A DNA stretch of 64,000 nt. It comes from Utricularia gibba (lineage: Eukaryota > Plantae > Magnoliophyta). Each line of letters starts with the position of its first letter. Positions within the stretch are counted from its first letter, which is position 1. The DNA lies in the NCBI GenBank assembly GCA_002189035.1, contig NEEC01000007.1:1550001-1614000 (forward strand). Reading direction: 5' to 3'. A program made the translations under genes and the position numbers. This document shows positions 3,647 through 28,201 of this stretch, piece by piece. The notes beneath the pieces were generated by a model that had not been told where the DNA came from, made no database searches, and saw nothing but the letters and a program-made list of their open reading frames with translations.

Positions 3647-6440
3647 ATGGGAGCGCTTGGGTCTTTGATCTTCTGTATTTGGGTTAGTTTGGTGGTGGGG
3701 ATGTCGTTTGCGGCAGACCCATTTGCGTTCTTCGACATGGAGTTCACTTACGTTACTATTTCTCCACTCGGAGTTCCTCAACAGGTTAACGGTCATTCTG
3801 GACTTTGCATTGTTTATTTTCATTACCTATGTCCTAAGTTCTTGATTTCATGTATCGTTCATTGTTGTCTATTCACTTAGTGCCCAAAGCATATCCTGGG
3901 TTATACATCTCTCATGCATTTAAGCATTAAAGTTTCTACCTTTGCCGTTTTTGTTCCTTATCTTCAGCGTCTTCCAATCGTAAAAAAGGGAGATTTTTGG
4001 CCTTGATTTAAAAGATTCGTCATTCCTTGATTCAAGTATGCACTTTTTTTTTCCAGTCAGTAATGCCTATAAATGTCTCGTCTTTTTTATGTTTTAAAGT
4101 ATATTTTGGCCCGTAACCTGCCTAAAGATATGCATGCTGGTTAATGCTTGAGAATCTTGCTTATCGATTGGTTATTTTTGGGGACGTAGTGACTGTATCA
4201 ATTATTATTCTATTTTGTAGGTTATAGCGGTTAACGGGATGTTCCCAGGTCCTGTTATAAACGTTACTACGAACTACAATGTTGTGGTAAATGTGAAGAA
4301 TAGGTTAAACGAGAATATGTTAATCACATGGTATGTATTGTACCTAGTGTTCCTCTGTGATTGAATTTCTAGTTGTCTTTTTCCTTTACAGGAAATGATT
4401 GATCTTGTACTTTCAGGCCTGGCATTCAAATGCGTCGCTCCTCGTGGCAGGATGGACTTCTTGGTACAAATTGTCCAATACCCCCAAGAAGGAACTGGAC
4501 CTATCAGTTCCAAGTGAAGGATCAGATTGGTAGCTTCTTTTACTTCCCATCATTGAACCTGCAGAGGGCTTCTGGTGGCTTTGGACCTTTTGTTATAATG
4601 AACCGAATTATCATTCCAGTCCCTTTTTCTACACCTGATGGAGAAATCACTATCATTATTGGTGATTGGTATGTACGAAGTCATGTGGTATGTGATCATA
4701 TGGCATAGGCTATTTTTTTTTTTTTTTTAATTTGTGTGCAGTGTTACTCCACAGCATCACATCTATCTTGTTTCATTTGTAACTTATTAGGCATTGAGAA
4801 CAGAACTTGACAATGGAAACGAGTTGGGTGTGCCAGATGGTGTTCTCATAAATGGGAAAGGCCCATATAGATATAACACAACTTTGGTTCCTGAGAACAT
4901 TGAATATGAAACCATAAATGTTGATCCTGGTAAGCCTTTGGTTCAGGTTTGCTTTTATTGTCCTTGAGATCATTCTGAGCTGCTCTTCTGTGTTTTTTTT
5001 TTTTTTTTTTTTTGGCTTTTTTTTATATATTTTCCCTTAATCGCAGGCAAAACATATCGTCTCCGAGTGCATAATGTAGGAACCTCAACTTGCTTGAACT
5101 TCAGGATTCAGGACCATAATTTGCTTTTGGCGGAAACAGAGGGCTATTACACGTCAATGCAGAATTACAGTAGTATGGACATTCATGTTGGCCAATCTTA
5201 TTCTTTTCTTCTGTCCACGGATCAGAATGCAAGCAGCGATTATTACATCGTGGCTAGTGCTAGGTTTGTGAATGGATCACTCTGGCAGAGAGTAACTGGT
5301 GTTGCAGTTTTGCATTATTCAAATTCCAATGGACCTGTTTCCGGACCACTTCCAGACCCCCCAAATGATGTCTATGACACAACCTACTCCCTGAACCAGG
5401 CCATGTCTATCAGGTACATCTGCATATTTACTCATCCTAATTTGGCTTCTATCTCATGCCTTGTAATAATGGTCAGGCAAAATGGTTCTGCAAGTGGAGC
5501 TCGTCCTAATCCACAAGGTTCATTTCATTATGGATCCATCACTGTAACGGATGTTTATATTCTTAGAATTCAACCTCCAACCTTGATTGATGGGAAATCC
5601 AGAGCGATGTATAATGGAATCTCATTTGCGAATCCTGATACACCAATAAACCTTGCTGATGCATACAATGTCAGGGGTGCTTACAAGCTTGATTTTCCAA
5701 CTCAGCCTTTTGATCGACCACCCATCGTTGACACTTCTGTGATCAATGCTACTTACAAAGGCTTCATAGAAATAATACTGCAGAACAATGACACCGTTTT
5801 GCAAACGTTTCATCTCAATGGTTACTCATTTTTTGTGGTCGGGTAATGTGCTAAAAACTGTAGTATTCCAGTGGCTGTTCATTATCTCAATGTTGGTGGC
5901 TCTAGTCTTATAGAATGCTGTATTTTCAGGATGGGTTTTGGTGTATGGAGTGAAAACAGTAGAGGTTCTTACAACCGGTGGGATGCAATATCCCGGTCAA
6001 CGGTGCAGGTTTGTACAAGTTTAGTTGCTTTGCCACACTGGATGCACTAACTGGCTCTGTGGCCAGGTATTTGCTGGAGGTTGGACGGCTGTATTTGTGT
6101 CTCTAGACAACGTCGGCATTTGGAATCTGAGGAGTGAAAACCTGGATAGATGGTATCGTGGACAAGAAACCTACATGAGGATAATTAATCCTGAAGATGA
6201 TAGTGGCAACAAAACAGTGATGCCTGTACCTGACAACGCCTTCTACTGCGGTGCCTTGAGCAATCTGCAAAGGTATAACATACAAATGCATCACTAACCC
6301 TGAGAAAATACACAACTGATGCATGCACCTCATCTTTCAGGAACCACATATCTTCTGCTTCGCCTGCTGGACTCGTACCCTTGGGACTGCTCATATTTGT
6401 GTTGGCATTCTCATATGTGACGATTCATAGGTACCATTAG
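3647..6440 (+). CDS. SKS: SKU5/SKS-family GPI-anchored multicopper-oxidase-like protein
   Basis: Signal peptide then AADPFAFFD..SPLGVPQQV; NGMFPGP; QDGLLGTNCPIPP; KDQIGSFFYFPS; FHLNGYSFFVVG (copper ligands degenerate, as typical for the family); hydrophobic GPI-type C-terminus; stop 6438-6440. Confidence 0.93.
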
Positions 6441-8179
6441 ACTCAACTCTGAGATTGTGAAGCAAGCACCATTTTGTCCTAAGATTGTTGGCTTATAAGT
6501 TGCCTTATAAGTGTTGATGTGCGCAAACAAGGTGATTGAGATTTATCTACTTTTTCTTAGGTAAAAGTCGCTTTACAGGAAAGAGAAGAATCATCATTGT
6601 GTATGTCATGTGACCAAAATGAATGAAAGATGAGGCTAGTTGCTAAACATCAAGCATTCAGCAAGAGCATGCTGTCTCCTTTTTATCTACTCTATGTCAC
6701 CCAAAATTGTATTTGGTTTATGACAAAAGAAACGCATACGGTTTAGAGCTGAGGTGAATCCCAAGTGGAAAATGGAAAAAAGCAATCACTAGAGCTTCTT
6801 TTGACACAAAATTTCATGCTTCCACCCCAGTACCAGACAACCTATTTATCTGATCACGCTCTTGCTGCATGCGCTCCCCCCTTTGTATCTATCTCTTCTT
6901 TTGTGTATCTATCCATCAATGCATTCATATTAATATGCACATGCCCTTACTCAGAACATCCCATTCTCATCCTTCTCTTCCCATTCTTTCTATCCATGTT
7001 CTCCGTCTGCCTTTCCTTGGAATAGCTCTCTACTTGGCTTCCCATGAACCATGAAATCAAAGGTCCTTGCGTTCCAGTTTCTGGGTAACGATCCCACTTT
7101 TCTTCTTTCATCGTCTTTCTGCTTGGCCACCATACATGCTGCTGCAAGTACTGGCTCATATCCACCCACAAGTGAAGCTGAAGATTGTGCTGACTTATGA
7201 GTATGCCAACTAATCGGTTCTCATAAACCATGTTCCTTATATTTGTTTTACAATCATGCGATTATACGAGTTGTTTTCTTCTTTTGGCAACAAAAAGAAT
7301 GTCATTAGGAAATGAGCAATCAGGTTTACAGCTCGCACTCCACTCTTTATTGATGTACAACGAAGCTTGTTTCCAACATGTTGCTAGCTTCTCTTTGAGT
7401 TCTCTTACATGTAAAGCATAAGAAAGCTCCTTGAGTAAAGGACCACCGCCCCCAGCTACACACCAGTCCCTCCTTCCAAGCGACGTTACAGAAAGAACTA
7501 CTAATGAGGTTTGGTTAGTGTGATCTACCCATCAGAGCAAAAAGACGATGTTTTCATCAAGGAATGCATGTCTACGAACTCAAAACTTGGGAATGGGGTC
7601 TATCGTCATTTGCCCATCTTGAGTGAGTTATCATCCAATGACAGTGATAAATGAGATTGCTTTTAACCTCACAGGGGTTCCCCACTTCACTAAAACTTTC
7701 AGAAAAATAGTTGAATGGATGACTCAGTTGTGCTAATGAGTCCTAATGTTGTTCTGATAAAAACCCTAAATTTATACAATCTAAGCATTCTGTGCTCATG
7801 TTCACTATTGACATCCATTTCTTCAAGATGCAGAATAATGTTTTTGAAGTGGAGTGTAGAACACTCTTACAAATCCATGTTTTGTTCCTATTTAGAAAAT
7901 GATTGAACCAATTGACCTACAGGGGTTTTCTTTATATTTGCATTTATGTTTGTTCATGTAATAAAGGCGAAATCTTGAGAACAAATAGGGTGAAATATGA
8001 AGGTAAAATAAGATACACAATGGATCATTACAGTAGCATCATTGAATCCTATTAATGTGTATTGCAAGATCAATAGTTAGTTATATTCTCCCAGTTATCT
8101 ACATGAAACCTTCCTTTAAGGATAAATCCTGAAACCTTCAACTCCACCTCCAGCACCTGTATATTCTTACAGATTCCAT

Positions 8180-9312
8180 TCACTTCCACACATCATCAAC
8201 GAGCTGATTTGAAGCAGAAGCGGAAGTGTTGTTGTCATGCTTTTCCATGAAGGGATTCATCTCCTCGCCGCGGCTGAATACATCATTTTCATCGTGGCTG
8301 AGCTGAGAGGCCACGAACTTGTCAAGAACCCTCCAGTCAGTAACATAATCATTAGAAAGATCACCATTGTTTATTGCAGGAGCTGAGCTGAAGTTGTTGG
8401 TGCCAAGGGCTTGGAATTGCTTTTCATGGCTGATCTCGTGGACCGGGCCGAAAGATGGAATCGGGATTTTGGGGCTTTCTAGAAATGGGAGATGGAGGTA
8501 GTGATCAGGTGGAAGCTGCATTCCGCTTCTTGCATACTGCAATTCCATTTCAGTCTTGCAGTAACTGTGGGGACGATGATGGACAGCATTGGGCTTTGGT
8601 GAATCCATGTCTGGCATGAAGGAGACATGATCATCGTACCAAATCGGAGAATCTTGCTCCGAAAATTTTCGTGTTGTTGCTGCTATTCTCTTCTTGAACA
8701 CCCTGCAAACCACCCACCCTTCCTCCTGCATTCACATAAGAAACGCATCATCTCGCAAAAACCTACTGCAACATGATTACTGCTGCAATAAACTCACCTG
8801 TGGAGCTGCATTTTCATCGGTTTCAAGGCGATATTCGTGCATGATCCAGTCCGATTTCTGGCCACTAGGAGCTCTTCCTTTGTAGAACACAAGGGTTTTC
8901 CTCATACCAATCAGCTCATGCTTGGAGTAAATAGCTTTATCACGTCCAGTCGCCTTCCAGAATCCGACCACCGTGGCCCGATTCGTCCTCGTCCCGGTTG
9001 GATATTTCTTATCCTTGTGACTGAAAAAGTACCATTCGTTCTGCTCCTCGCTCCCTATTCTGCAAAGCGCTGTAACCAGCAACACAAAAGGTGTTATCGA
9101 TATCTCATGCCTTTGAAGAGCTTGCTAAATGATGAAACACTTCTGCTCCAACCTTGTAAATCCCATGGCTCAATCTTGTAGAGATCGACGTCTCTGATCA
9201 CGTCTACGTCGATCCGACGAGAAGTCACCTTCCTCCTCAAGTAATAATCCACAAGTTCCTCATCTGTGGGATGGAATCTGAAGCCTGGAGGAACCTGAGA
9301 AAATGCATTCAT
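8180..9312 (-). CDS. VND: NAC transcription factor, VND (xylem vessel regulator) subgroup, 3 exons
   Basis: [51 protein letters not shown], and the VND-type C-terminal motif [14 protein letters not shown]. Confidence 0.95.
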
Positions 9313-12327: not shown

Positions 12328-13860
12328 TTAGAGTCCTCTTTCCCTCATCATCTCCTCCACTTGCTCCGCCTCCGTATGCCAGCCAACACTCCTGTAAATC
12401 TTGATCAACAAATCATAATTATGCACGCCTTCGGGCTCTAAAACCGATAGATGATCGGCGGCAATCTTCCCAAAGTGAGGATTCCCGTGAAGGTAGCATC
12501 CGTAGAGCAAGGCCCCCCAAACACTAGCCCCGGCATCCTTACCCTCCATCTTCTTCATGATGAAATTATACGCTTCCTCGATGTATCCTGCTCTGGCGTA
12601 CAGGTTCACCATGCACCCATGATGCTCGATAGATGGGTCGATCCGGTACTTGTTTGACATCAGGGCGAATAATCTCTCCCCATCCTTTACCATCCCTGAA
12701 TGAGCACAAGCTGATAAAACCAAGACGAAGGTGACATCATCCGGGGTTGCATTGGACTCGATCATGTGATTGAAGTAGTCTAGTGCTTCAGGGTCCTTAG
12801 AATGGGCTGATATGATCGAATTCCATGAAACAACGTCTCGGTGTGACATGGTGTTGAACAAGGCTCTTACTTTCCTTAACTGGCTGAAGTTGGAGTAGAA
12901 AACCATCAAGGAATTGGCAACGGGGAGATGGAGATGCATACCATGGCGAAGCACCCACCCATGGATCTCTGTCCCTATTTTGTAAGCATTTATGTTGGCG
13001 ACAAGGGAAGATAGAGTCACTGAATCTGGAGCAACACCTTCTGAAACCATCCGTTGAAGAGTACACAATGCTTCTGAAACTAAGCCATGGTTGATGAATC
13101 CGAGAATCATGGAGTTCCACGAAACTACGTCCTTATTCTTCAGTGTGTTGAAGACTTTCCAGGACTTGGCAATGTCACCACATTTCGCATACATATCCAC
13201 AACTGCATTGAGAACAAAAGAGTTAGTTCCAAATCCATGCCGAATCAAGTTTCGATGGACCTCCTCCCCAACATGGATCATCCCGATGCGTCCGCAAGCT
13301 TTCAACACCCTCGGGAATGTGTATTCATCGGGCTCCACTCCTTCTTCCACCATCTGAAAGTAGAGCGCCAACGCGTCCTCGTATAATCTTGCCTCAGCAT
13401 AACCCGCAATAAGCGAGTTCCATGGAAACGCCGAAGTGTTTCTCCCAGGCATTACGTCGAACATCTCGTGCGCCTTTTCCAAATCCCCTTTACAGACGTA
13501 CAACCTCATGAGCTTCGATGAGATACCCACGTTCTTGCGAATGAGCTTATCGGGGATGAGACGATGAAGCCTGAGACCATGATCGATAGCGTTCACCTGG
13601 AAACAGGTCTCCAACAGAGAAGCGAAGATTTGCGGATCGTCTATTGATACGCCTCTGCTGACGAAGGATTCCAACTTGTTCATGACGATTTCAAGAGCCT
13701 CGAGCTTCGTGCGGGTCTCTAGCTTCGGATCGGGTAGCAAAGGATTGGGGCGTGATTTGGGGAAGGGGGAATTTGTTGTGCTTCTCTTCCGGTAAATGTG
13801 CTGCTCATCATGCTTCTTCCTCACGGCGTAGAACGATGAAGGGGCGCAGCATGACTCCAT
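12328..13860 (-). CDS. OTP70: PLS-class (E-subgroup) PPR protein, OTP70/At4g25270-like, intronless
   Basis: 510-aa ORF with repeated PPR motifs (PWNSLIAGYAE, VSWNSMILGF, IEHHGCMVNLYARAG, VWGALLYGC); no DYW domain. N-terminal region resembles At4g25270, and the gene sits beside a UMP-CMP kinase as in Arabidopsis. Confidence 0.9.
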   Translation of the reverse strand: MESCCAPSSFYAVRKKHDEQHIYRKRSTTNSPFPKSRPNPLLPDPKLETRTKLEALEIVMNKLESFVSRGVSIDDPQIFASLLETCFQVNAIDHGLRLHRLIPDKLIRKNVGISSKLMRLYVCKGDLEKAHEMFDVMPGRNTSAFPWNSLIAGYAEARLYEDALALYFQMVEEGVEPDEYTFPRVLKACGRIGMIHVGEEVHRNLIRHGFGTNSFVLNAVVDMYAKCGDIAKSWKVFNTLKNKDVVSWNSMILGFINHGLVSEALCTLQRMVSEGVAPDSVTLSSLVANINAYKIGTEIHGWVLRHGMHLHLPVANSLMVFYSNFSQLRKVRALFNTMSHRDVVSWNSIISAHSKDPEALDYFNHMIESNATPDDVTFVLVLSACAHSGMVKDGERLFALMSNKYRIDPSIEHHGCMVNLYARAGYIEEAYNFIMKKMEGKDAGASVWGALLYGCYLHGNPHFGKIAADHLSVLEPEGVHNYDLLIKIYRSVGWHTEAEQVEEMMRERGL

Positions 13861-14155: not shown

Positions 14156-15697
14156 CTACACACCTACCCCTAATGTAGCGAACACAGAGCGCACCCTTGC
14201 GAAAATTTCATCTTCTGATCCAGTACCATCAATCTGCAATCGTTTTAATATTTGTTAGAGCTTGCAAGTCAATGTCAAGAAACTACAAATGAGCATAAAA
14301 CACACGGGAATGGCAGGACAAGAAAAAAAAAAAAGTCCATCTCTGCGAGGAAGCATATAGTTGGAAGTTGAATAAGAAAAAGAAGACGATCACCAGGTAA
14401 GACAATTCAATACCTTCTGAACTTTCCCTATGCTAGAATAGTAATTAATGACAGGAAGATTTAGTTCTGCAAATACTCTGAGTCTTTTCTTGACGGTTTC
14501 TATATTGTCATCAACCCTCCCCTACATAAGAAAACACAGTCTCCTGAAATGAGTATGTTGGTATAACCTAGAGAAGGTTGAGGATCAAGATTAAGGACTG
14601 ACCTGATTACGGCAAAGGACTCGTTTGACCATTTCTTCTTCAGAGCAGTCGAAGAAAAGCACAACATCAGGTTCAGTGCCAATCTGTGTTGTTAATTTTT
14701 CCAAAATATGATGTATTTTTTTACAACTGCAACCAAAAGAAATGACATGACAGGGAGGCAAAACTTACTACTTTTTCATATGCAACACGGTTCTCTTCAG
14801 TTCTTGGGAAGCCATCAATAAGAAATCTGTCATTTTTACTGGCTTCCATGGCCCTCTGGATTAGTCTAACAGTCACTTCGGAAGCCACAATCTTTCCTTC
14901 CTTGATTGTATTGAGAATCATGGACCTGCAACATGATCCCTTTAGAATCTACAATTGAACACTTTCTAACAAAGAAAATTCAAATTGTTACCCATTCTCG
15001 CTATCAGAAGAAATTTCTTTTCTTAATAGATCCCCTGCACTTAGGTGAGTAAAGTTGAAGGCCTCAACAATCCTCGCACACTGAGTACCCTTTCCGCTCC
15101 CAGGACCCCCTGAATGCATACGTATCACACATGGATTTGAGGAAAACAACAGCTCAGAATCAAGTCACACAGTCGAAACTTCATTAGGAATCTTAACCAA
15201 GAAAACATTACCCAAAACAAAAGCTACAAAAGGGCGTTGCGTCCTATCAACGATTTCACCGTCCACCTGTATGTCAGATAATGAGTCAAAACAGAATATA
15301 AAATCAACATCATCCATTCAAGAAATATGAAATGTTAGCTTTTCACTTTAAAAAAGAAGCATCCAGTAAATAAGACCTTCCAAAGGAATAGACTAATGAT
15401 CTTCAAAATCACCCAGCCTCGATATCATCGGGATTCAAATCAATAAAAATATACATAATCAGGAATTGGAAACAATACCGGATTCAGAACTTGAGTACTC
15501 AACACACGATGAGCATTGAGTCCGCACGACACCTGAATGCATCAGCAACCACGTTCAGGCCGACAACAAAATCTCACCACCTACACAACAAAATGCGCGA
15601 AATAACAATGAGCGGACGGCGGTAAAGCTACCTGATCTAGAAGCCGCCGCTTGTGAGAAGCAAAAACCGGCGACAGCGATGCGAATCGCCTCCACAT
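14156..15697 (-). CDS. UMK: UMP-CMP kinase (adenylate kinase family), At4g25280-like, with organellar transit peptide
   Basis: [10 protein letters not shown] start; P-loop [32 protein letters not shown] exons. The position of the last stop codon is less certain. Confidence 0.88.
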
Positions 15698-16499
15698 ATC
15701 AAATCCAGAGCGCGGTAGAAGACTTCAACTCCGGATCACGAGTAGTCAACCTGAAGAGACTTTTCGTCGGACAGTTTCCGATGTGCAAGTAAATGAACGG
15801 CAACGGCTCTATAAATTAGCCTTCTAAAAAAAGCGTTGCGTCATTCTTAAGTAGATCTGCTTCATACCAGAATGAAGTGCCCTGACACTAAGCGTATTTA
15901 TATTACGGATTTCATTTTATATTACGTCTGTTTAGAATAACTTTATATTCCTCTAAAAACAATCCAAAATTAAAATTTTATGCTTTTGTACCAAAAATAA
16001 TATAAAGTTAAAAACACTTCTTACCAAATAAAGTCTAAAATACAGAGACTAAAATTCTAAAACCACCATACATTTACAGCCGTTAAAATATCTGTATATA
16101 AGCTTTACTTACAGAACACTCGAAGAAAAATGCAATAAATTAATTGGAGCCACTGAGCCGTTTCCTGCATCCGGATCAGGCAAGAAATGCGAGGTTTCGT
16201 GCCATCACAAATAAATGACTCGAGCACCTAGAAGGTTTGTGCACGAAGAATGTATGTGTTGTGCAGGATTTGTGTGCTTCTAAACTATCAGCTTACATCC
16301 ACAGCCTGCGGAATCATGCTTCTGGTCGTTTCTGCGCTCATCTCTGCGTTTCGATATGATGAATGACAAAGGTGATTCTGCACAGATGGGAATGAGAAGG
16401 GGATTATCATGAGAGAAAGTTTGTTCAAGGACATTACTAACTTGCTGACTGTAAGGATATGTCATATTGTCAGCTGTGTTTTTAAGGAATGCTCAGTCT

Positions 16500-22430
<5,931 letters not shown>

Positions 22431-22665
22431 GGTGAATTTCCTCCGCTCTGCACCGCGGTGGTGGGTTGCAGTGCTTCATCTAAAGAAACTGGATCAGGTT
22501 GGGGACCTTTTTCAAGCACAAAAATCGGATTTAGGTATTTGATCATTCCTCGGAAGAGATTTTCGCGGGAAAGTGGAGGCCGTTAGAAGACGACACGTAT
22601 GCCAGTCCCCAAGTATTTTCAGTGGGCGGTTGTTCCATTACCCGTCTTCCTAAATCATTTAATAT

Positions 22666-22687
22666 TATATATATATATATATATATA
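22666..22687. repeat. (TA)11 microsatellite upstream of IRE
   Basis: Direct reading of the sequence. Confidence 0.9.
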
Positions 22688-23239
22688 CTAATTAATGAAA
22701 AATTTATCCTAAATTTTTTTAAAAAAATCAATGAATTTTAGATGAAATGTGAAAGAAATGAGTAATCTCAATACGAAGAATTGTCACTAAATAAGTTCCA
22801 TATTTCCATTTTCAATGACAATTGAATTTTAGATGAGAAAAGAAAATATATGTCAAATATAAATTATAATTAAAATAATCTATAATACTTAAACGTGTTG
22901 ATTTAAAAAGTTATCTTAAAATGAGTTGAATTATTAATTTACAAATATTAATGTCTTAACAGGAGTATTGAATGCAAGGCGCCTTCGCCTGCAAGAGTCT
23001 CCAGACGAATGGGATGGTTTTTTTCTTAAGTATTTGTAGCATATTTCACTCCCATCGTCTTCCTGTTCTTTGCAAGAACAGTTGCAAATTGAGTATTGAA
23101 GTACTTGCAGAATGAAAAACCGATAATGGGATCGTGTTCTTCCTCAGAGATCAAAATAATCAAACTTCAACGACAGTAGATAAAAAAAATGAAACCAGAA
23201 GACAAGGTCTCTGAAACTCTAAACATCTCAGGACAAGGT

Positions 23240-24037
23240 CTAGGAATCAGCGATGGTGACTTCAACCTCCACACCAGGTTCTATTGTGATTGAGGTGATC
23301 TGTTTCACAACATCCGGGGAGCTGAAGAGGTCGATGATGCGCTTGTGAACTCGGAGTTCGAACCTGTCCCAGGTATTGGTGCCTGTGGAACAAGTACACA
23401 AGTCCAGAGATGAATGAAGCCAACCAACTAGAAATGAAGAAATCAAGTAGTATATGAATTGAGATGCAAAGTAGAGGCTTGGACTCTCTACTAGCATCGA
23501 TGAGAAGCAATTACCTTCACCACAGGGAGATTTTCTTGTGGTGATGTTAAGAACCTTGGTCGGCATTCTCACCGGACCCTTGACTGCAAGCTTTTTATCT
23601 TTGGCACCTCGGACCAAGTCGGCACAAACTGAGTGAGACCATAAAATCACTAATCAGTGGTTCGCCCCAGAAACAAAACAAGTCCTTTAAGCCAAATACA
23701 GGAAAAGAGTTGATCCTGAGAGCATCATATTTCGTGCACATTAACCAAAACAACGGATCAACGACAAGCTCACGCTACCCGAAGAAATTCGTATATAAAA
23801 AGGGGCTAGACATCATCCTTATCCATCATGGAAAAAAGCAGCAATACATTACATGCAATGGACACTAGAATCACTATGAAACAACAATCTCGGAACTTTT
23901 CAATCAACCAAGGAAATCGTACCCTTCTCCAGATTCTTCACATTCTTCGACGACAGCGTGATCCGTATCTTGTGAATCTGTTCCAGAGGCTCCTCGAGCC
24001 CAGTCTTTCCCGGCTTGACGGCAGCGTATGTTGCCAT
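23240..24037 (-). CDS. RPS20: 40S ribosomal protein S20 (uS10), 3 coding exons plus a non-coding first exon
   Basis: [17 protein letters not shown] / [18 protein letters not shown] / [24 protein letters not shown]. Confidence 0.97.
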
Positions 24038-24239
24038 ATTTCGATCAAATTCGCTAACGCAACATGTTAAAGAGGCAACTATTAGCGTTTTGAACTTAAA
24101 TTTCGAGATGCAGAAGAATCATTTAAAAAAACATTTGCCGCATATTGTTAGGTAGTGCTCACCGGCGGCGTCAGGCGTAGAGCGGCCGTGCAGTCGACAG
24201 GAAACCTTGCACTCTTAACAATCTGTTGATGCTCTGTAT

Positions 24240-24295
24240 CTTAAACCTAGGGTTTGTCGATGGGCCATATTAGAATCGGGTTACTCCCGGCCCAT
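24240..24295 (-). promoter_or_regulatory. RPS20 promoter: telo-box plus site II elements
   Basis: TAGGGTTT (telo-box AAACCCTA on the minus strand), TGGGCC and GGCCCA site II motifs; the standard plant ribosomal-protein promoter arrangement. Confidence 0.75.
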
Positions 24296-24340
24296 CAAAC
24301 AATATGTTAAAAATGTTTATTCAATTCTTATACCACTATA

Positions 24341-24544
24341 GTCTGTGTTTGATAGCAATATCGATATAAATTATTACGATATGAATTTCTTCTGATTGAA
24401 CATATAAAAATAAGGAGGAATGGAAACAATTTTATGTTTTGTAAAGAATAAAAAGATATACTGAAAAAATTTAATTTCGATTATCAAATATATTATTATT
24501 ACAGATATTGGAATTACTATGCTATCCTTATTATCAAATACGAC
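24341..24544. mobile_element. Degenerate Tourist/PIF-Harbinger-like MITE
   Basis: AT-rich ~200 bp bounded by imperfect inverted termini GTCTGTGTTTGATA / TATCAAATACGAC; no clean TSD. Confidence 0.4.
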
Positions 24545-24911
24545 CATTTGATTAACCAAAACTAATATTTTAAATGAAAAATATCATAAATCACTTATAC
24601 GAGCACTTTATGATTCAAAACGATCTAATCATAATTTTATCGACTTTAACCCAACTCCTATATTATAAACCAACCGTGATTGAGTTGCATTTTGGGCAAA
24701 ACACAGCATGCATATGAAGTCAAAAATTGCTGAAACAAAATTTTCACAGGTTGAATAAGAAGAATATGTTACAACAGGCAGGCAGAGCATGTGATGTCAA
24801 AAACTGCTTTGCTGACATGGGAATATCTCATAAGGGACTCATCAAGGGCACACCAAACGGCATAGATTAGATCTACTAGGAAGCTACGGACAGAGACAAG
24901 AAGAAGGCAGT

Positions 24912-26449
24912 TCACATGCGGCCATTCGTATCATCCTTCTCCACCTCTTCAGCATCCTCAAACCGCCGATCGTTGATCTGGAGCTGTAACAAATGAGTCG
25001 TGTTCTTGTTACTATAAAAGAGAAGCCATCATAATGTGTCGAGGAGAAACAATGTCACAGTTGGAAGGCTTAATTTCAGAGAAAGAACACTCGAAATGAC
25101 TATGCACAAAGAAGGCTGACAAAAGAAGTACAAGGAAGAAAAATGAGACTGCAGGTTTATGATAGGATTATGATAAAATGCATATCTGGGGATGATGAAG
25201 ATACAGCAATACGTTCAATCAAAGCAACTGTATATATGCGGACCTGTAGCACCGAATGTGCTAAGTCATTATTCTCATTGGCGCCAATAGAATTGGATGC
25301 ATTTGAGTTGGCCCATTCAGAATCCTCATCATCTAAGTAAACAAAAGGAAAGCAAAATAGTGAACAGGGGGTGTAACAGAAAAGGGAAATGAACAAGGAG
25401 AACTACAGCTAAAGGCAATGTTCAGTACCGCCGTCATCATCTTCAAATTGACCAGCACTGAAAACCCAGTCATGCCCATTTTCATTCTCTGTTCACGGAG
25501 TGAACATTTAACTTAGTTCATGTATATCAAAAGAGACTGCAACTACGAGAAAATTTCCACAGGAGTACTGGTACCTTCAGTGAGGTCAGGATTAAGTTCC
25601 GCACATTCACAAAATATAGAGAACAATGTATCCACTGTATGAGAGCGAGAGGAGTTTCACCACATAGTTTCAGCATTACAAGGAGCCCCATAAAACAGGA
25701 AAACAAAAGTTCAGATTGCTTAATTGAAAGATAGTTGCATACACTGGTTAGGATCCGAAGGCACAAGCCTCATCTCTCTTATCTTAGATAAATCCAATGC
25801 ATCATCATCCTCAGAATCTGAATCCTCCATCTCATAATCCTCAGTCCCATTATCGATCTTGACATGAAAAAAAAAATAGACAGTAAAACCAAAATTGAAC
25901 GTCTTATTAAAAGAATCATACGAAACGGCCATATACTAAAAAGTTTTCTCTTCGTACTTCTCTACGTAACAAGTCAAAGCACCATGTCCATAAAGAATAT
26001 GATAAACAGCTCAAATGGCAATCCAAATAGCCAGAATCCACTGAAATGTAATTTACCTGAGTATATATACAGGGAGAAGGGTACGACTCAGGATCTCTGG
26101 ACACCGCATGTAATGACACAGAAGTAAAATCAACCGCATAGCCTTTACTCCTGTCCGTATCACTCAGCCAAACAAGCTGCCTAAACCGTATAGAACAATT
26201 CAAATAAAAATTCAAATAAACTTCCATACCAAAAACACTCGCGTAAAAAATCACACCAAATAGTAGAAACACTGATCAACCTGGTGGAAATGTAAAGTGT
26301 GCCGCATGGTTCCGGTGGTCTGTGCCCGAGGACGATCGCAACAGCCGGTTGCTGATGCATTAGCTCCTCTCCATTATCTACGTCTAATATTGGCCCCCAG
26401 CTCCGTCGCCTATTCTCTCCGCAACGGCGTGAATTCCGGCAGCCACCAT
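24912..26449 (-). CDS. ICln: pICln / chloride conductance regulatory protein (methylosome subunit); apparent 1-nt frameshift at 26394-26398
   Basis: MVAAGIHAVAERIGDGAG [shift] PILDVDNGEELMH, GTLYISTR, KGYAVDFTSVSLHAVSRD, DLSKIREMRLVPSD, LQINDRRFEDAEE. Lies next to RPS20 and IRE as in At5g62290-62310. Confidence 0.88.
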
Positions 26450-26702
26450 GTCTCCAAGAAAAGACTACTCTAATAGGCTCCGAGAGCACAATATTTTCCG
26501 ACGGCAGCGTAGATGGATATTTCTATCGCATTCGCTACTGCAGCATGGTAAAAGCGCAACAAATCAGCATTTTGAACAGGTACTCACGCTTGCGAAGCCA
26601 TTCTTACCGGCAGCGTGAGGCGGAGACCGGCGATGCAGTAGTAACAAATCCTGGCGAGGATGACTTCACTACCGTCTACTGATCTGATGCCCCGGATCTT
26701 TA

Positions 26703-26757
26703 ACCTAGGGTTTGTCAATAGCCCAATTTTACAATTTCAATTGGGGCAAGGCCCACT
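26703..26757 (-). promoter_or_regulatory. pICln promoter: telo-box plus site II-like elements, paralogous to the RPS20 promoter
   Basis: AACCTAGGGTTTGTC is identical to the RPS20 promoter; also AGCCCA and GGCCCA. Confidence 0.7.
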
Positions 26758-27299
26758 AACATGTAACTAAATATTTATAAAAACCCTTGAATAATAATTT
26801 AAAATTTAAAATATACCTTCTATTTTTAATAATTTTATTATCATAAAAACTCCATTTATATCTCAAAAAAAACCTAGAAATATACATTATATTTAAAAAG
26901 ATGGCGTCCTTCAAATTCTATATTTTTATTTATTTTTACTTCTTTATGATTAGTTTGAATTTTGTTCGATTGAGTGTTTTCTTAAATGGTATATAAAAAA
27001 TTCAGAGTTTCACATGGAAGGAATTCAAGCTTCTCGGCGCATTCGTTGACCGAGTCAGCGATGCGAGAATCATGAAGCAGGTACGGAGGCATTACTAGTT
27101 GCTGTTCTCTCTGACTTCGATGGAATGCGTTCAGCCCTACAATTGACATTCAAAGTTCACATGCAAATGATGCATTAGGTACGCCCAAATCCTCCAAGAC
27201 AAATGGTTCAGTTAGCAGAGCACAATATGCGTTAGTGGCAGCATATCCCTTCTATATATACTGTGAGTAAGGGAAAGCAGGAACCAGGAAATAGCAGCA

Positions 27300-28201
27300 A
27301 TGCAAGTTTCTAAGAGTGGAAGAAAGAGAGAGAGACAGAGCATCACCGTTCCCTTCGTCTGGGAAGAGAAGCCTGGGATCCCCAAGAGGGATTGGAAGCC
27401 TACCACAGGCCAACAAAGTAAGCATGCTTTGCTTCCTGTGAAGCTCGTCGTGTCAGTTCCCTTCAGGTGGGAAGAAAAGCCGGGGACGCCTCTCAGGTCA
27501 TTTGTGGAACCTGCAGCGGAGGAGTTGGGGTTGGAATATAATGAGAAGGAGGGCTCCATTGTTTCATTACCTGGTACGTGCTTCAAGGAGGGAGGCTTGT
27601 GTGGCTGCGGTGACCAGGGGGAGGATGAGGGAGATGATATGCGCAGCGTTCAGACGGATGACTCCTACGACTCTGCGCAGTGTCTACTAGCATCAACTAT
27701 GCCAACTGCTGGTCGTGTTAAGCTGCATCATACTCCGATTGCACCAGCAGATGATGAATTTGGGCAGCAGCAGACTTTTTTTTCGGGGACTTGTGGTCCA
27801 GATGGTGTTGCTAGCAGGTACGAAACAGAAACCACAAACCTGACTGGGGCTTCTTTTCTGGAGTGGCTCTTCCCTCTATTGGTATCGAATTCCAGTTCGC
27901 TGGACAAGGTTGGATGCAGACAGAACGATGCTCCTCAAGGATATGGAAACTGCAATCAAGTTCAAAGACCATTATTAACGCTTGGGGAGCTGATAGTGAT
28001 GAGCCGAAGAAGAAGTTGCCAAAGAAGAGTAAAAAAACTGCCATCTGAGGTGATAAATTTCATCCACAAACTATCACTGAATGCATAGTTTCCAATGCAT
28101 AATACCTGCTTTTGTGATGACAGAATGTTATGAGGAGGAGGAGGACATTGCAGTTGGGCTGTGGTATCTTCCGAAGACACCTGCAACTGAAACTACTCTA
28201 G
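27300..28201 (+). CDS. DUF688 family (hydroxyproline-rich, At5g51680-like) protein, 2 exons
   Basis: Twin VPFVWEEKPGIPK / VPFRWEEKPGTP motifs, SFLEWLFPL, LTLGELIVMSRRRS. Likely intron 28050-28123 and last exon ending LQLKLL*. Confidence 0.8.

What the first reader, a model, noticed from the sequence alone, without database searches (positions are those of the whole stretch)
24158..26757. RPS20 and neighbouring pICln share a duplicated promoter plus non-coding first exon (possible promoter capture)
Seen: 24158-24193 vs 26603-26638 (exon end and donor) match 29/36 without gaps. 24228-24266 vs 26686-26724 (TSS region and telo-box) match 32/39. The order is the same, followed by GGCCCA site II, and intron-start similarity continues (GTGAG..TACCT..AATGC). 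Identity extends well beyond the short telo-box/site II motifs, so convergence is unlikely. Inference: one unrelated neighbour acquired a copy of the other's 5' regulatory module by local duplication or conversion, probably placing the snRNP-assembly factor pICln under ribosomal-protein-type control.
Basis: partly seen in the sequence, partly recalled or inferred. Interest (0 to 1): 0.75.

Follow-up and report, generated by a model that had tools for sequence, protein, structure and literature searches.

The report
pICln borrowed RPS20's promoter and leader
In this small-genome plant of the mint/olive order, the gene for the snRNP-assembly factor pICln has lost its own promoter and now sits behind a decayed ~310-bp copy of the front end of its neighbour, ribosomal-protein gene RPS20; this is a clean but not unprecedented case of a gene front end rebuilt by local duplication.

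Summary
Both genes lie on the minus strand, with pICln upstream of RPS20.

The homology is one collinear block, 24320-23987 vs 26778-26470, at 75% identity with 16 indels and z about 34 against shuffles. It runs through site II and telo-box motifs, the non-coding exon 1, the donor, the leader intron, the acceptor and RPS20's first 17 codons.

That coding relic (start codon now ATC) lies in pICln's leader, so the direction was RPS20 to pICln.

- **Relatives:** in eight other plants pICln has its own short promoter. In six, a telo-box lies 46-72 nt before the ATG. The window lacks this promoter.
- **Not new control:** the swap is like-for-like, since pICln was already a telo-box gene.
- **Selection:** the pICln coding sequence stayed under purifying selection (dN/dS about 0.1).
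- **Parallel case:** Handroanthus carries an independent, or conversion-homogenised, partial RPS20 copy upstream of pICln with the native promoter still present.
- **Same genome:** earlier unchecked scan notes describe three similar captures on other DNA of this genome.
- **Open points:** transcription from the copy is inferred, not shown. A -1 frameshift sits in pICln's first coding exon.

Verdict: a known mechanism, new example.

The parts
26686..26778 (-). Copy B, promoter block upstream of pICln. Site II motifs at 26750-26755 and 26720-26725, telo-box at 26706-26713.
   Evidence: 79% identical to RPS20 block 24228-24320. Motif positions. No homology further upstream (z 1.1).
26608..26713 (-). 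Predicted non-coding exon 1 of pICln. The 5' end is not mapped; it is drawn here from the telo-box. No ATG inside.
   Evidence: 70% identical to RPS20 exon 1. The donor CCG|GTAAGA is homologous to RPS20's CCG|GTGAGC.
26535..26607 (-). Predicted pICln leader intron, 73 nt, GT..AG. An alternative donor AGC|GTGAGT follows 26588. A 37-nt deletion relative to RPS20 removes most of the 5' half.
   Evidence: The 3' half plus acceptor is 76% identical to the RPS20 intron. The acceptor ..GCAGTAG|CGAA matches ..GCGTTAG|CGAA.
26470..26534 (-). pICln exon-2 leader derived from RPS20 exon 2. It holds the 16-nt RPS20 leader, the dead start codon (ATC at 26516-26518) and the relic of RPS20 codons 4-17 (26475-26511). 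A mini-uORF ATG-CGA-TAG lies at 26523-26531.
   Evidence: Leader 13/16 identical and coding relic 80% identical. The relic alone gives z 8.8 against shuffles. It shares the derived GCT GCC GT state with this species' RPS20 and not with other species.
26450..26469 (-). Junction between the RPS20-derived sequence and the last few native leader bases before the pICln ATG.
   Evidence: Homology to RPS20 stops here (z 0 beyond codon 17). The native AAAACCCTAAT..CCAATT core promoter of other Lamiales is absent.
24912..26449 (-). pICln coding region. Exons: 26449-26281, 26180-26057, 25857-25743, 25634-25575, 25488-25429, 25332-25244, 24983-24912 (TGA).
   Evidence: Exon-by-exon translations. Pfam Voldacs PF03517, E 1e-9, on exon 3. 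dN/dS 0.08-0.11 against Sesamum and Handroanthus.
26394..26398 (-). G5 run where the pICln reading frame is short by one base. The ATG-26449 frame stops at TAG 26384-26386. The next in-frame ATG is at 26358-26360.
   Evidence: Alignment with six orthologues shows a single 1-nt gap here. Translations.
24228..24320 (-). Copy A, RPS20 promoter block. Site II motifs at 24289-24294 and 24261-24266, telo-box at 24248-24255.
   Evidence: The same site II / telo-box / leader-intron layout is seen in RPS20 of Erythranthe, Sesamum and Primulina. Matching motif positions 210-390 nt before the ATG occur in Handroanthus, Penstemon, Actinidia and Prunus.
24163..24255 (-). RPS20 non-coding exon 1 (5' end not mapped).
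   Evidence: Donor CCG|GTGAGC at 24163/24162.
24054..24162 (-). RPS20 leader intron, 109 nt.
   Evidence: GT..AG boundaries, 65% A+T. No Rfam family in it.
23240..24053 (-). RPS20 exons 2-4: 24053-23923 with ATG at 24037, 23628-23515, and 23382-23240 ending in TAG.
   Evidence: Translations. Pfam Ribosomal_S10 PF00338 on exons 3 and 4.

Best explanation
**Shown.** A ~330-bp piece of the RPS20 5' end was copied to just upstream of pICln. The piece spans the site II and telo-box promoter, non-coding exon 1, the leader intron, the acceptor, the 16-nt leader and codons 1-17. The copying happened in this plant's own lineage (Lentibulariaceae-like Lamiales), after that lineage split from the Bignoniaceae, Pedaliaceae, Phrymaceae, Gesneriaceae and Plantaginaceae sampled. 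The copy now ends about 20 nt before the pICln ATG. The native pICln core promoter, which has a telo-box 46-72 nt before the ATG in relatives, is gone, as is the ancestral upstream neighbour RPS13.

**Inferred.**
- pICln is now transcribed from the copied RPS20-type promoter.
- Its mRNA starts with the copied non-coding exon.
- The copied 73-nt leader intron is spliced out.
- The leader carries the dead RPS20 start region (ATG changed to ATC).

**Likely route (inferred).** The first possibility is a tandem duplication with one breakpoint in RPS20 exon 2 and the other just upstream of pICln, which puts the RPS20 5' end in front of a second pICln, followed by loss of the upstream copy. The second is a deletion or break upstream of pICln that was patched by copying the nearby RPS20 5' end.

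Functionally this replaces one telo-box promoter with another. It is not a new regulatory regime.
For: - **Homology and extent:**. The block is 334 vs 309 nt, 75.4% identical, with 16 indels and z about 34.
- **Polarity, coding relic:** an RPS20 coding relic with the start codon changed to ATC lies in pICln's leader. It is significant on its own (z 8.8). It shares derived bases with this species' RPS20 only.
- **Polarity, tree:** (WIN_A,WIN_B) has 100/100 support, with the pICln-side branch 0.51 against 0.054 for RPS20.
- **Ancestral state, gene order:** RPS13 then pICln then RPS20, all on one strand, in Sesamum, Erythranthe, Primulina, Penstemon and Actinidia. pICln then RPS20 in Prunus and Handroanthus.
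- **Ancestral state, promoter:** the pICln telo-box lies at -46 to -72 in six species, against -264 in the window. There is no pICln/RPS20 5' similarity in Sesamum, Erythranthe, Primulina, Penstemon, Prunus, Actinidia or Arabidopsis.
- **Function after capture:** pICln coding exons give dN/dS 0.08-0.11 and carry one frameshifting indel in ~690 nt. The copied module carries 13 non-3n indels in ~330 nt. The gene therefore stayed expressed.
- **No other candidate promoter:** the copy holds the only telo-box between the pICln ATG and the divergent DUF688 gene at 27300.
- **Splice signals:** donor and acceptor are kept, and exon 1 has no uATG.
- **Known mechanism:** tandem duplications with breakpoints in two parallel genes yield chimeras that carry the downstream gene's 5' end (PMC4069613).
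Against: - **No transcript evidence:** none could be obtained. The transcription start and the 26608^26534 splice are predictions.
- **Relaxed constraint:** the pICln-side copy has evolved about ten times faster than the RPS20 side. That fits relaxed constraint as well as a changed function.
- **Weak motif argument:** with 75% identity, retention of the 15-nt telo-box stretch is not by itself more than chance would give (my estimate).
- **Possible broken gene:** the first pICln ATG frame is broken by a -1 shift. If real, this copy may be failing, or it may use a later ATG.
- **Route not resolved:** no homology remains upstream of the copy. Tandem duplication plus loss therefore cannot be told apart from direct patch-copying.
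Confidence: 0.7

Rival explanations
1. The copy is an inert RPS20 pseudo-fragment. Either pICln is transcribed from a cryptic start inside or just after the relic, or this pICln copy is itself a dying gene with a working paralogue elsewhere in this repeatedly duplicated genome.
For: - The B-copy branch is long: 0.51 against 0.054.
- There are 16 indels, including a 37-nt loss in the intron.
- A -1 frameshift lies 53 nt after the first pICln ATG.
- In Handroanthus a similar RPS20 fragment sits upstream of pICln while the native promoter is still there, so such fragments can exist without being used.
Against: - The native core promoter is absent and no other telo-box lies in the 850 bp up to the next gene.
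- All other pICln exons are intact, with dN/dS about 0.1. That is incompatible with long-standing silence.
- The N-terminal 19 codons before the frameshift still match orthologues, so the break is recent or a homopolymer error.
Confidence: 0.15
2. One old duplication was shared by the ancestors of this lineage and Bignoniaceae. It was kept similar within each species by gene conversion between the two tandem copies. A later deletion in this lineage fused the RPS20 fragment to pICln.
For: - Handroanthus also has a partial RPS20 copy ending 84 nt before the pICln ATG, and also lacks RPS13 within 10 kb upstream.
- The junctions are within ~60 nt of each other on the pICln side.
- Handroanthus falls in the same unresolved group as the window plus Genlisea in the PPR tree.
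Against: - Each copy groups with its own species' RPS20 (100/100 and 100/98 support). The AU test rejects a clade of the two pICln-side copies, p 1e-9.
- The breakpoints differ: RPS20 codon 17 here, intron 2 in Handroanthus.
- Within-species distances (0.56 and 0.15) are far below the between-species distance of about 1.3.
- The idea needs conversion in two lineages plus an extra deletion.
Confidence: 0.12
3. Chance or convergence: the two promoters merely share the short telo-box and site II motifs typical of growth-related plant genes.
For: Both motifs are common in such promoters (PMC3022908), and pICln orthologues carry a telo-box of their own.
Against: - Collinear homology covers ~330 nt, including intron and coding relic, at z about 34.
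- Five other telo-box regions in the window score 10-21 against 77 for this pair.
- Seven other species show no pICln/RPS20 5' similarity.
Confidence: 0.01
4. Assembly artefact: a mis-joined or collapsed duplicate of the RPS20 5' end.
For: None beyond the general possibility. The assembly does have one suspicious homopolymer indel nearby.
Against: The copies differ by 69 substitutions and 16 indels, which is not how assembly duplicates look. An independent assembly of another species (two Handroanthus haplotigs, 98% alike) shows the same kind of arrangement.
Confidence: 0.02

Closest known systems
Chimeric genes and 5'-end recruitment created by tandem duplications whose breakpoints fall in two parallel neighbouring genes (Drosophila surveys, PMC4069613; review PMC3449122)
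   Same: The junction places the downstream gene's promoter and 5' exons in front of the upstream gene's body. The parental downstream gene stays intact. The donor's coding start is carried along.
   Different: Here the donor coding part is not translated into the product: its ATG is lost and it ends up as leader. The expected upstream parental pICln copy is no longer present. The event is old (JC distance 0.30) rather than a segregating variant. The tandem route itself is inferred.
Other 5'-end captures noted by this scan in the same genome (s1-181095 RPL36a to GT61; s1-257877 mS23 to RIX1/PELP1; s1-290770 UBP to EFL1)
   Same: A decayed partial copy of a neighbour's promoter, first exon and intron start stands in front of an unrelated gene. 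Two donors are ribosomal-protein genes. Two other recipients are ribosome-assembly genes.
   Different: These are unchecked notes on other DNA, and I did not re-test them. Here the whole leader intron and 17 codons were copied, and the replaced promoter was of the same telo-box type.
Partial RPS20 copy upstream of pICln in Handroanthus impetiginosus (found here, L007/L010)
   Same: Same donor, same recipient and same orientation. The copy starts upstream of the RPS20 promoter and ends inside the RPS20 transcription unit. It lies immediately upstream of pICln.
   Different: The copy is larger (about 3 kb, reaching into intron 2) and younger (73-87% identity). It is interrupted by a ~3.1-kb insert with 383-bp direct repeats. 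The native pICln telo-box promoter at -72 is intact, so no capture is needed there. The tree says it arose separately or was homogenised separately.
Telo-box plus site II promoters of plant ribosomal-protein and ribosome-biogenesis genes (PMC3022908)
   Same: Both copies have site II motifs followed by AAACCCTA at the start of the transcribed region, which is the layout described for almost all RP genes.
   Different: That literature describes a motif class spread among many genes. Here a whole module was inherited by copying, not assembled motif by motif.

Membership tests
Gene 5' end captured by partial local duplication (chimeric leader/promoter) | A segment shared by descent between two adjacent non-homologous genes, limited to their 5' ends | tested here: met
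   75% identity over ~330 nt, z about 34. No homology upstream or downstream of the block.
Gene 5' end captured by partial local duplication (chimeric leader/promoter) | Identifiable donor: donor-specific sequence (coding relic) inside the recipient's non-coding leader | tested here: met
   The relic of RPS20 codons 1-17 has ATG changed to ATC. It gives z 8.8 alone and shares derived bases with this species' RPS20.
Gene 5' end captured by partial local duplication (chimeric leader/promoter) | The recipient's ancestral 5' end is different and is missing here | tested here: met
   Six species have a pICln telo-box at -46 to -72 and no leader intron geometry. The window has none there.
Gene 5' end captured by partial local duplication (chimeric leader/promoter) | Recipient transcripts start in the captured module and splice its intron | not testable with these tools
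   No transcript data could be reached.
Plant RP-type telo-box / site II promoter | Site II (TGGGCY) upstream of telo-box AAACCCTA at the 5' end of the transcription unit | tested here: met
   Copy A has motifs at -257, -229 and -218. Copy B has them at -306, -276 and -264, in the same order and with spacing within 2 nt.
Plant RP-type telo-box / site II promoter | Promoter activity dependent on these motifs | not testable with these tools
   Needs reporter assays.
pICln / Voldacs (PF03517) | Match to the family profile above the curated cut-off | tested here: met
   Exon 3 alone scores 39.1 bits against a cut-off of 22.1. It is 90% identical to Lamiales pICln.
pICln / Voldacs (PF03517) | Uninterrupted reading frame from the conserved start codon | tested here: not met
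   There is a -1 shift at the G5 run 26394-26398 relative to six orthologues. Whether this is real or an assembly error is not decided.
Ribosomal protein S20e (PF00338) | Profile match and intact three-coding-exon gene | tested here: met
   Exons 3 and 4 score 33.4 and 37.9 bits. All exon translations are intact.

The most novel reading that the evidence does not exclude
Front-end borrowing may be a recurrent rescue route in this deletion-prone, minute genome. When microdeletions or fractionation remove a promoter, essential genes survive by acquiring a copy of the adjacent gene's 5' module. pICln/RPS20 would be the fourth case noted in this genome, and three of the four recipients act in RNP or ribosome assembly. 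The pICln-RPS20 pair may itself be a hotspot, hit independently in Handroanthus.
Probability: 0.2. Interest if true: 0.65.

Novelty: new member of a known kind. Interest (0 to 1): 0.4.

Why it matters
- **Dated natural experiment:** an essential snRNP-assembly gene lost its own core promoter and has lived, under purifying selection, behind a copied ribosomal-protein promoter, non-coding exon and leader intron.
- **Testable unit:** it delimits a compact RP-type module of about 310 bp that appears sufficient for a housekeeping gene. That unit can be tested directly in reporters.
- **Before-and-after pair:** the Handroanthus arrangement is a plausible "before" state, with the fragment present and the native promoter intact.
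- **Genome compaction:** together with three similar notes from the same genome, it points to a testable idea about how genes survive extreme genome compaction.
- **Annotation:** the pICln model needs a non-coding first exon and a leader intron. The RPS20-like ATG region must not be called as coding. The G-run frameshift needs checking.

Tried and rejected
- **Chance or motif convergence:** rejected by shuffles and by five in-window plus many cross-species telo-box controls.
- **Third copy or mobile element:** none in the window.
- **Structured RNA or snoRNA in the conserved intron half:** no Rfam match at E <= 1.
- **Ancient feature shared with Arabidopsis:** no. There RPS20 is convergent to pICln and the 5' regions are unrelated.
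- **Apparent weak pICln/RPS20 similarity in Erythranthe and Primulina (scores 32-34):** inspection showed only A+T-rich low-complexity alignment.
- **Single origin of the window and Handroanthus copies without conversion:** rejected by the AU test.
- **Homology upstream of the copy, expected from a simple tandem duplication:** not detectable.
- **Penstemon's local pICln duplicate:** it lacks any RPS20 5' fragment.
- **Finding this species' own pICln protein or transcripts:** the exact look-up of a window PPR protein found nothing. No protein more than 90% identical to the window exons appeared among 477 fetched. Andrographis P0467 was not on record.
- **Joined model:** I searched the spliced models exon by exon and left out any search with a joined model.
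- **Failed run:** a first PPR tree run was killed by the memory limit and repeated with a lighter model.
Full report
**What is there.** The window is plant nuclear DNA. Both genes of the finding lie on the minus strand.

- **RPS20.** It has a non-coding exon 1 ending at 24163, a 109-nt leader intron (24162-24054), and three coding exons: 24053-23923 with ATG at 24037, 23628-23515, and 23382-23240.
- **pICln.** It lies immediately upstream, with coding region 26449-24912 in seven coding exons.
- **Identities.** These rest on exon-by-exon translations and on Pfam hits to Voldacs and Ribosomal_S10.
- **Neighbours.** The gene on the far side of pICln is a divergent DUF688 gene starting at 27300. 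Beyond RPS20 lies an IRE-type kinase gene that matches the Arabidopsis one, 44% over 466 aa.
- **Method note.** I searched spliced models exon by exon and left out any step that needed a joined model.

**Checking the observation.** The two ungapped matches are exactly as reported, 29/36 and 32/39, and the repeat finder finds the second independently. They are parts of one collinear homology block.

- Gapped local alignment scores 77, against 14.5 +/- 1.8 for dinucleotide shuffles.
- blastn gives E 5e-13 and 5e-10 and shows no third copy in the window.
- A global alignment of 24320-23987 with 26778-26470 has 212 matches, 69 mismatches and 16 indels. That is 75.4% identity, JC distance 0.30.
- Identity by block:

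| Block | Identity |
|---|---|
| Promoter | 79% |
| Exon 1 | 70% |
| Intron 5' half | 67%, with a 37-nt loss in the pICln copy |
| Intron 3' half plus acceptor | 76% |
| 16-nt leader | 81% |
| RPS20 codons 1-17 | 80% |

- Homology stops on both sides: z 1.1 upstream and z 0 beyond codon 17.
Five other telo-box regions in the window score 10-21.

- pICln's leader contains the region homologous to the RPS20 start codon and first 17 codons. The ATG now reads ATC (26516-26518).
- This relic is significant by itself (z 8.8).
- It shares GCT GCC GT with this species' RPS20, where Erythranthe, Sesamum and Primulina have GCA GCG/GCT ATG.
- In a tree of RPS20 5' regions, the pICln-side copy is sister to this species' RPS20 (100/100). 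Its branch is 0.51, against 0.054 for the RPS20 side.

**Ancestral state.** I fetched the pICln locus from nine other species.

- **Gene order.** Sesamum, Erythranthe, Primulina, Penstemon and Actinidia have RPS13, pICln and RPS20 in a row on one strand. Prunus and Handroanthus have pICln then RPS20. A GAE-type epimerase gene follows in several. Arabidopsis has RPS20 convergent to pICln, followed by IRE.
- **RPS20 layout.** In the Lamiales sampled, RPS20 has site II and telo-box motifs 210-390 nt before the ATG and a leader intron.
- **pICln promoter.** It has a short native promoter with a telo-box 46-72 nt before the ATG in Sesamum, Erythranthe, Primulina, Handroanthus, Penstemon and Arabidopsis. 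In the Lamiales this sits within a conserved AAAACCCTAAT..CCAATT core.
- **The window.** That core is absent, and its only telo-box is at -264 inside the RPS20-like module. RPS13 and the epimerase are not in the window.
- **Controls.** Within-locus pICln-5' versus RPS20-5' similarity is at chance level in Sesamum, Erythranthe, Primulina, Penstemon, Prunus, Actinidia and Arabidopsis.

**Handroanthus parallel.** Two haplotigs (98% alike) carry a partial RPS20 copy upstream of pICln.

- The copy starts about 2.6 kb upstream of the RPS20 ATG. It runs through exon 1, intron 1 and a shortened exon 2 into intron 2, and ends 84 nt before the pICln ATG.
- It is 73-87% identical to the resident RPS20.
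- It is interrupted by a ~3.1-kb insert with 383-bp direct repeats.
- The native pICln telo-box at -72 is intact.
- The tree groups this copy with Handroanthus RPS20 (100/98). The AU test rejects a clade of the two pICln-side copies (p 1e-9).
- The two events are therefore independent, or one older duplication was homogenised separately in each lineage. I cannot separate these fully.
- Either way, Handroanthus shows what the state before capture could look like.

**Taxon and age.**

- A single-exon PPR gene of the window finds Lamiales best, at only 65% identity.
- In a tree that PPR gene is sister to Genlisea (SH-aLRT 99). Both are on long branches, so this is indicative only.
- With about one gene per 3.5-4 kb, the window fits a Lentibulariaceae genome of the minute, deletion-prone kind described for Utricularia gibba (PMC4972453). 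I did not identify the species.
- Synonymous distance of pICln to Sesamum or Handroanthus is about 1.5-1.7, and the A-B distance is 0.3-0.56.
- The copy therefore post-dates the split from those families but is not recent. I estimate a quarter to a half of the way back, as an inference.

**How it most likely works.**

- **Shown:** the copy, its limits, its donor, the loss of the native promoter, and purifying selection on pICln. dN/dS is 0.08-0.11 over about 200 codons, with one frameshifting indel in ~690 nt against 13 in the ~330-nt module.
- **Inferred:** because the coding sequence stayed under selection long after the capture, something drove its expression. The copied module holds the only telo-box/site II promoter-like motifs I found in the 850 bp up to the next gene.
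- **Anatomy that fits:** it keeps the motif order and spacing, a good donor (CCG|GTAAGA), the homologous acceptor, an ATG-free exon 1 and a dead RPS20 start.
- **Mechanism:** it matches the known way in which a tandem duplication with breakpoints in two parallel genes puts the downstream gene's 5' end before the upstream gene's body (PMC4069613). That would be followed by loss of the redundant upstream copy. Patch-copying during repair of a deletion is an alternative.
- **Consequence:** pICln orthologues already have a telo-box promoter, and such promoters are typical of translation-apparatus genes (PMC3022908). The regulatory consequence is therefore probably small.

**Open problems.**

- **Frameshift.** The first pICln ATG (26449) opens a frame that stops after 21 codons. 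Alignment with six orthologues shows one missing base in a G5 run, 26394-26398. The codons before the break still match orthologues, so this is a homopolymer assembly error or a very recent lesion. An in-frame ATG at 26360 would still give the conserved core.
- **No transcript evidence.** None was reachable.
- **Other cases in this genome.** Earlier scan notes, which I did not check, describe three further front-end captures. This makes the present case less singular but raises the question of a genome-wide tendency.

**Verdict.** A real, well-delimited and polarised case of promoter, first exon and leader-intron capture by partial local duplication. It is a new member of a known kind and of moderate interest.

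Noticed in passing
window 26384-26449, G run at 26394-26398: The pICln frame from the conserved ATG is short by one base relative to six orthologues and stops after 21 codons. The next in-frame ATG is at 26358-26360. This is either a homopolymer assembly error or a recent frameshift.
   Followed up: partly
L010 4456-9917 vs 14977-18022 (Handroanthus impetiginosus; L007 is the other haplotig): About 3 kb of the RPS20 upstream region, exon 1, intron 1, a shortened exon 2 and part of intron 2 is duplicated immediately upstream of pICln, with the native pICln promoter kept. The copy is split by a ~3.1-kb insert flanked by 383-bp direct repeats (5889-6246 / 8656-9038) that contains a tandem array (about 7670-8530).
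   Followed up: partly
L001 8033-10580 vs 16243-18563; L011: Penstemon davidsonii has a 5'-truncated tandem duplicate of pICln (75-79% identical). It lacks the promoter and first coding exon and is merged in the public gene model with a KIB1-4 beta-propeller/F-box gene. The intact copy keeps the native telo-box promoter.
   Followed up: partly
L008 7018-8181 and 10431-11518; P0434, P0440, P0025: Prunus brigantina has two tandem RPS20 genes after pICln. Public gene models fuse pICln with RPS20 in Prunus and Actinidia, and fuse RPS13 with pICln in Rhododendron. This is probably read-through mis-annotation of very closely packed same-strand genes.
   Followed up: no
L004-L006, L008, L009, L002 and window 16000-27000: The block RPS13-pICln-RPS20-GAE epimerase is conserved from rosids to asterids. 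Arabidopsis and the window instead share pICln-RPS20-IRE kinase, with RPS20 inverted in Arabidopsis. Locus tags suggest 10-14 genes between pICln and the PPR gene in other eudicots, against two here, i.e. heavy gene loss in this block.
   Followed up: partly
window 26523-26531: The RPS20-derived pICln leader has gained a minimal uORF (ATG CGA TAG) where RPS20 has CGAATTTGATCG.
   Followed up: no
window 24123-24149 and 24298-24324: A 27-nt inverted repeat (78% complementary) brackets the RPS20 core promoter and exon 1. The intronic arm lies in the stretch that is deleted in the pICln-side copy. It is A+T-rich and may be chance.
   Followed up: no
window 12328-13860: An At4g25270-type PPR gene in a single exon. 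In a one-gene tree it is sister to Genlisea aurea on a long branch, suggesting the genome is from Lentibulariaceae.
   Followed up: partly
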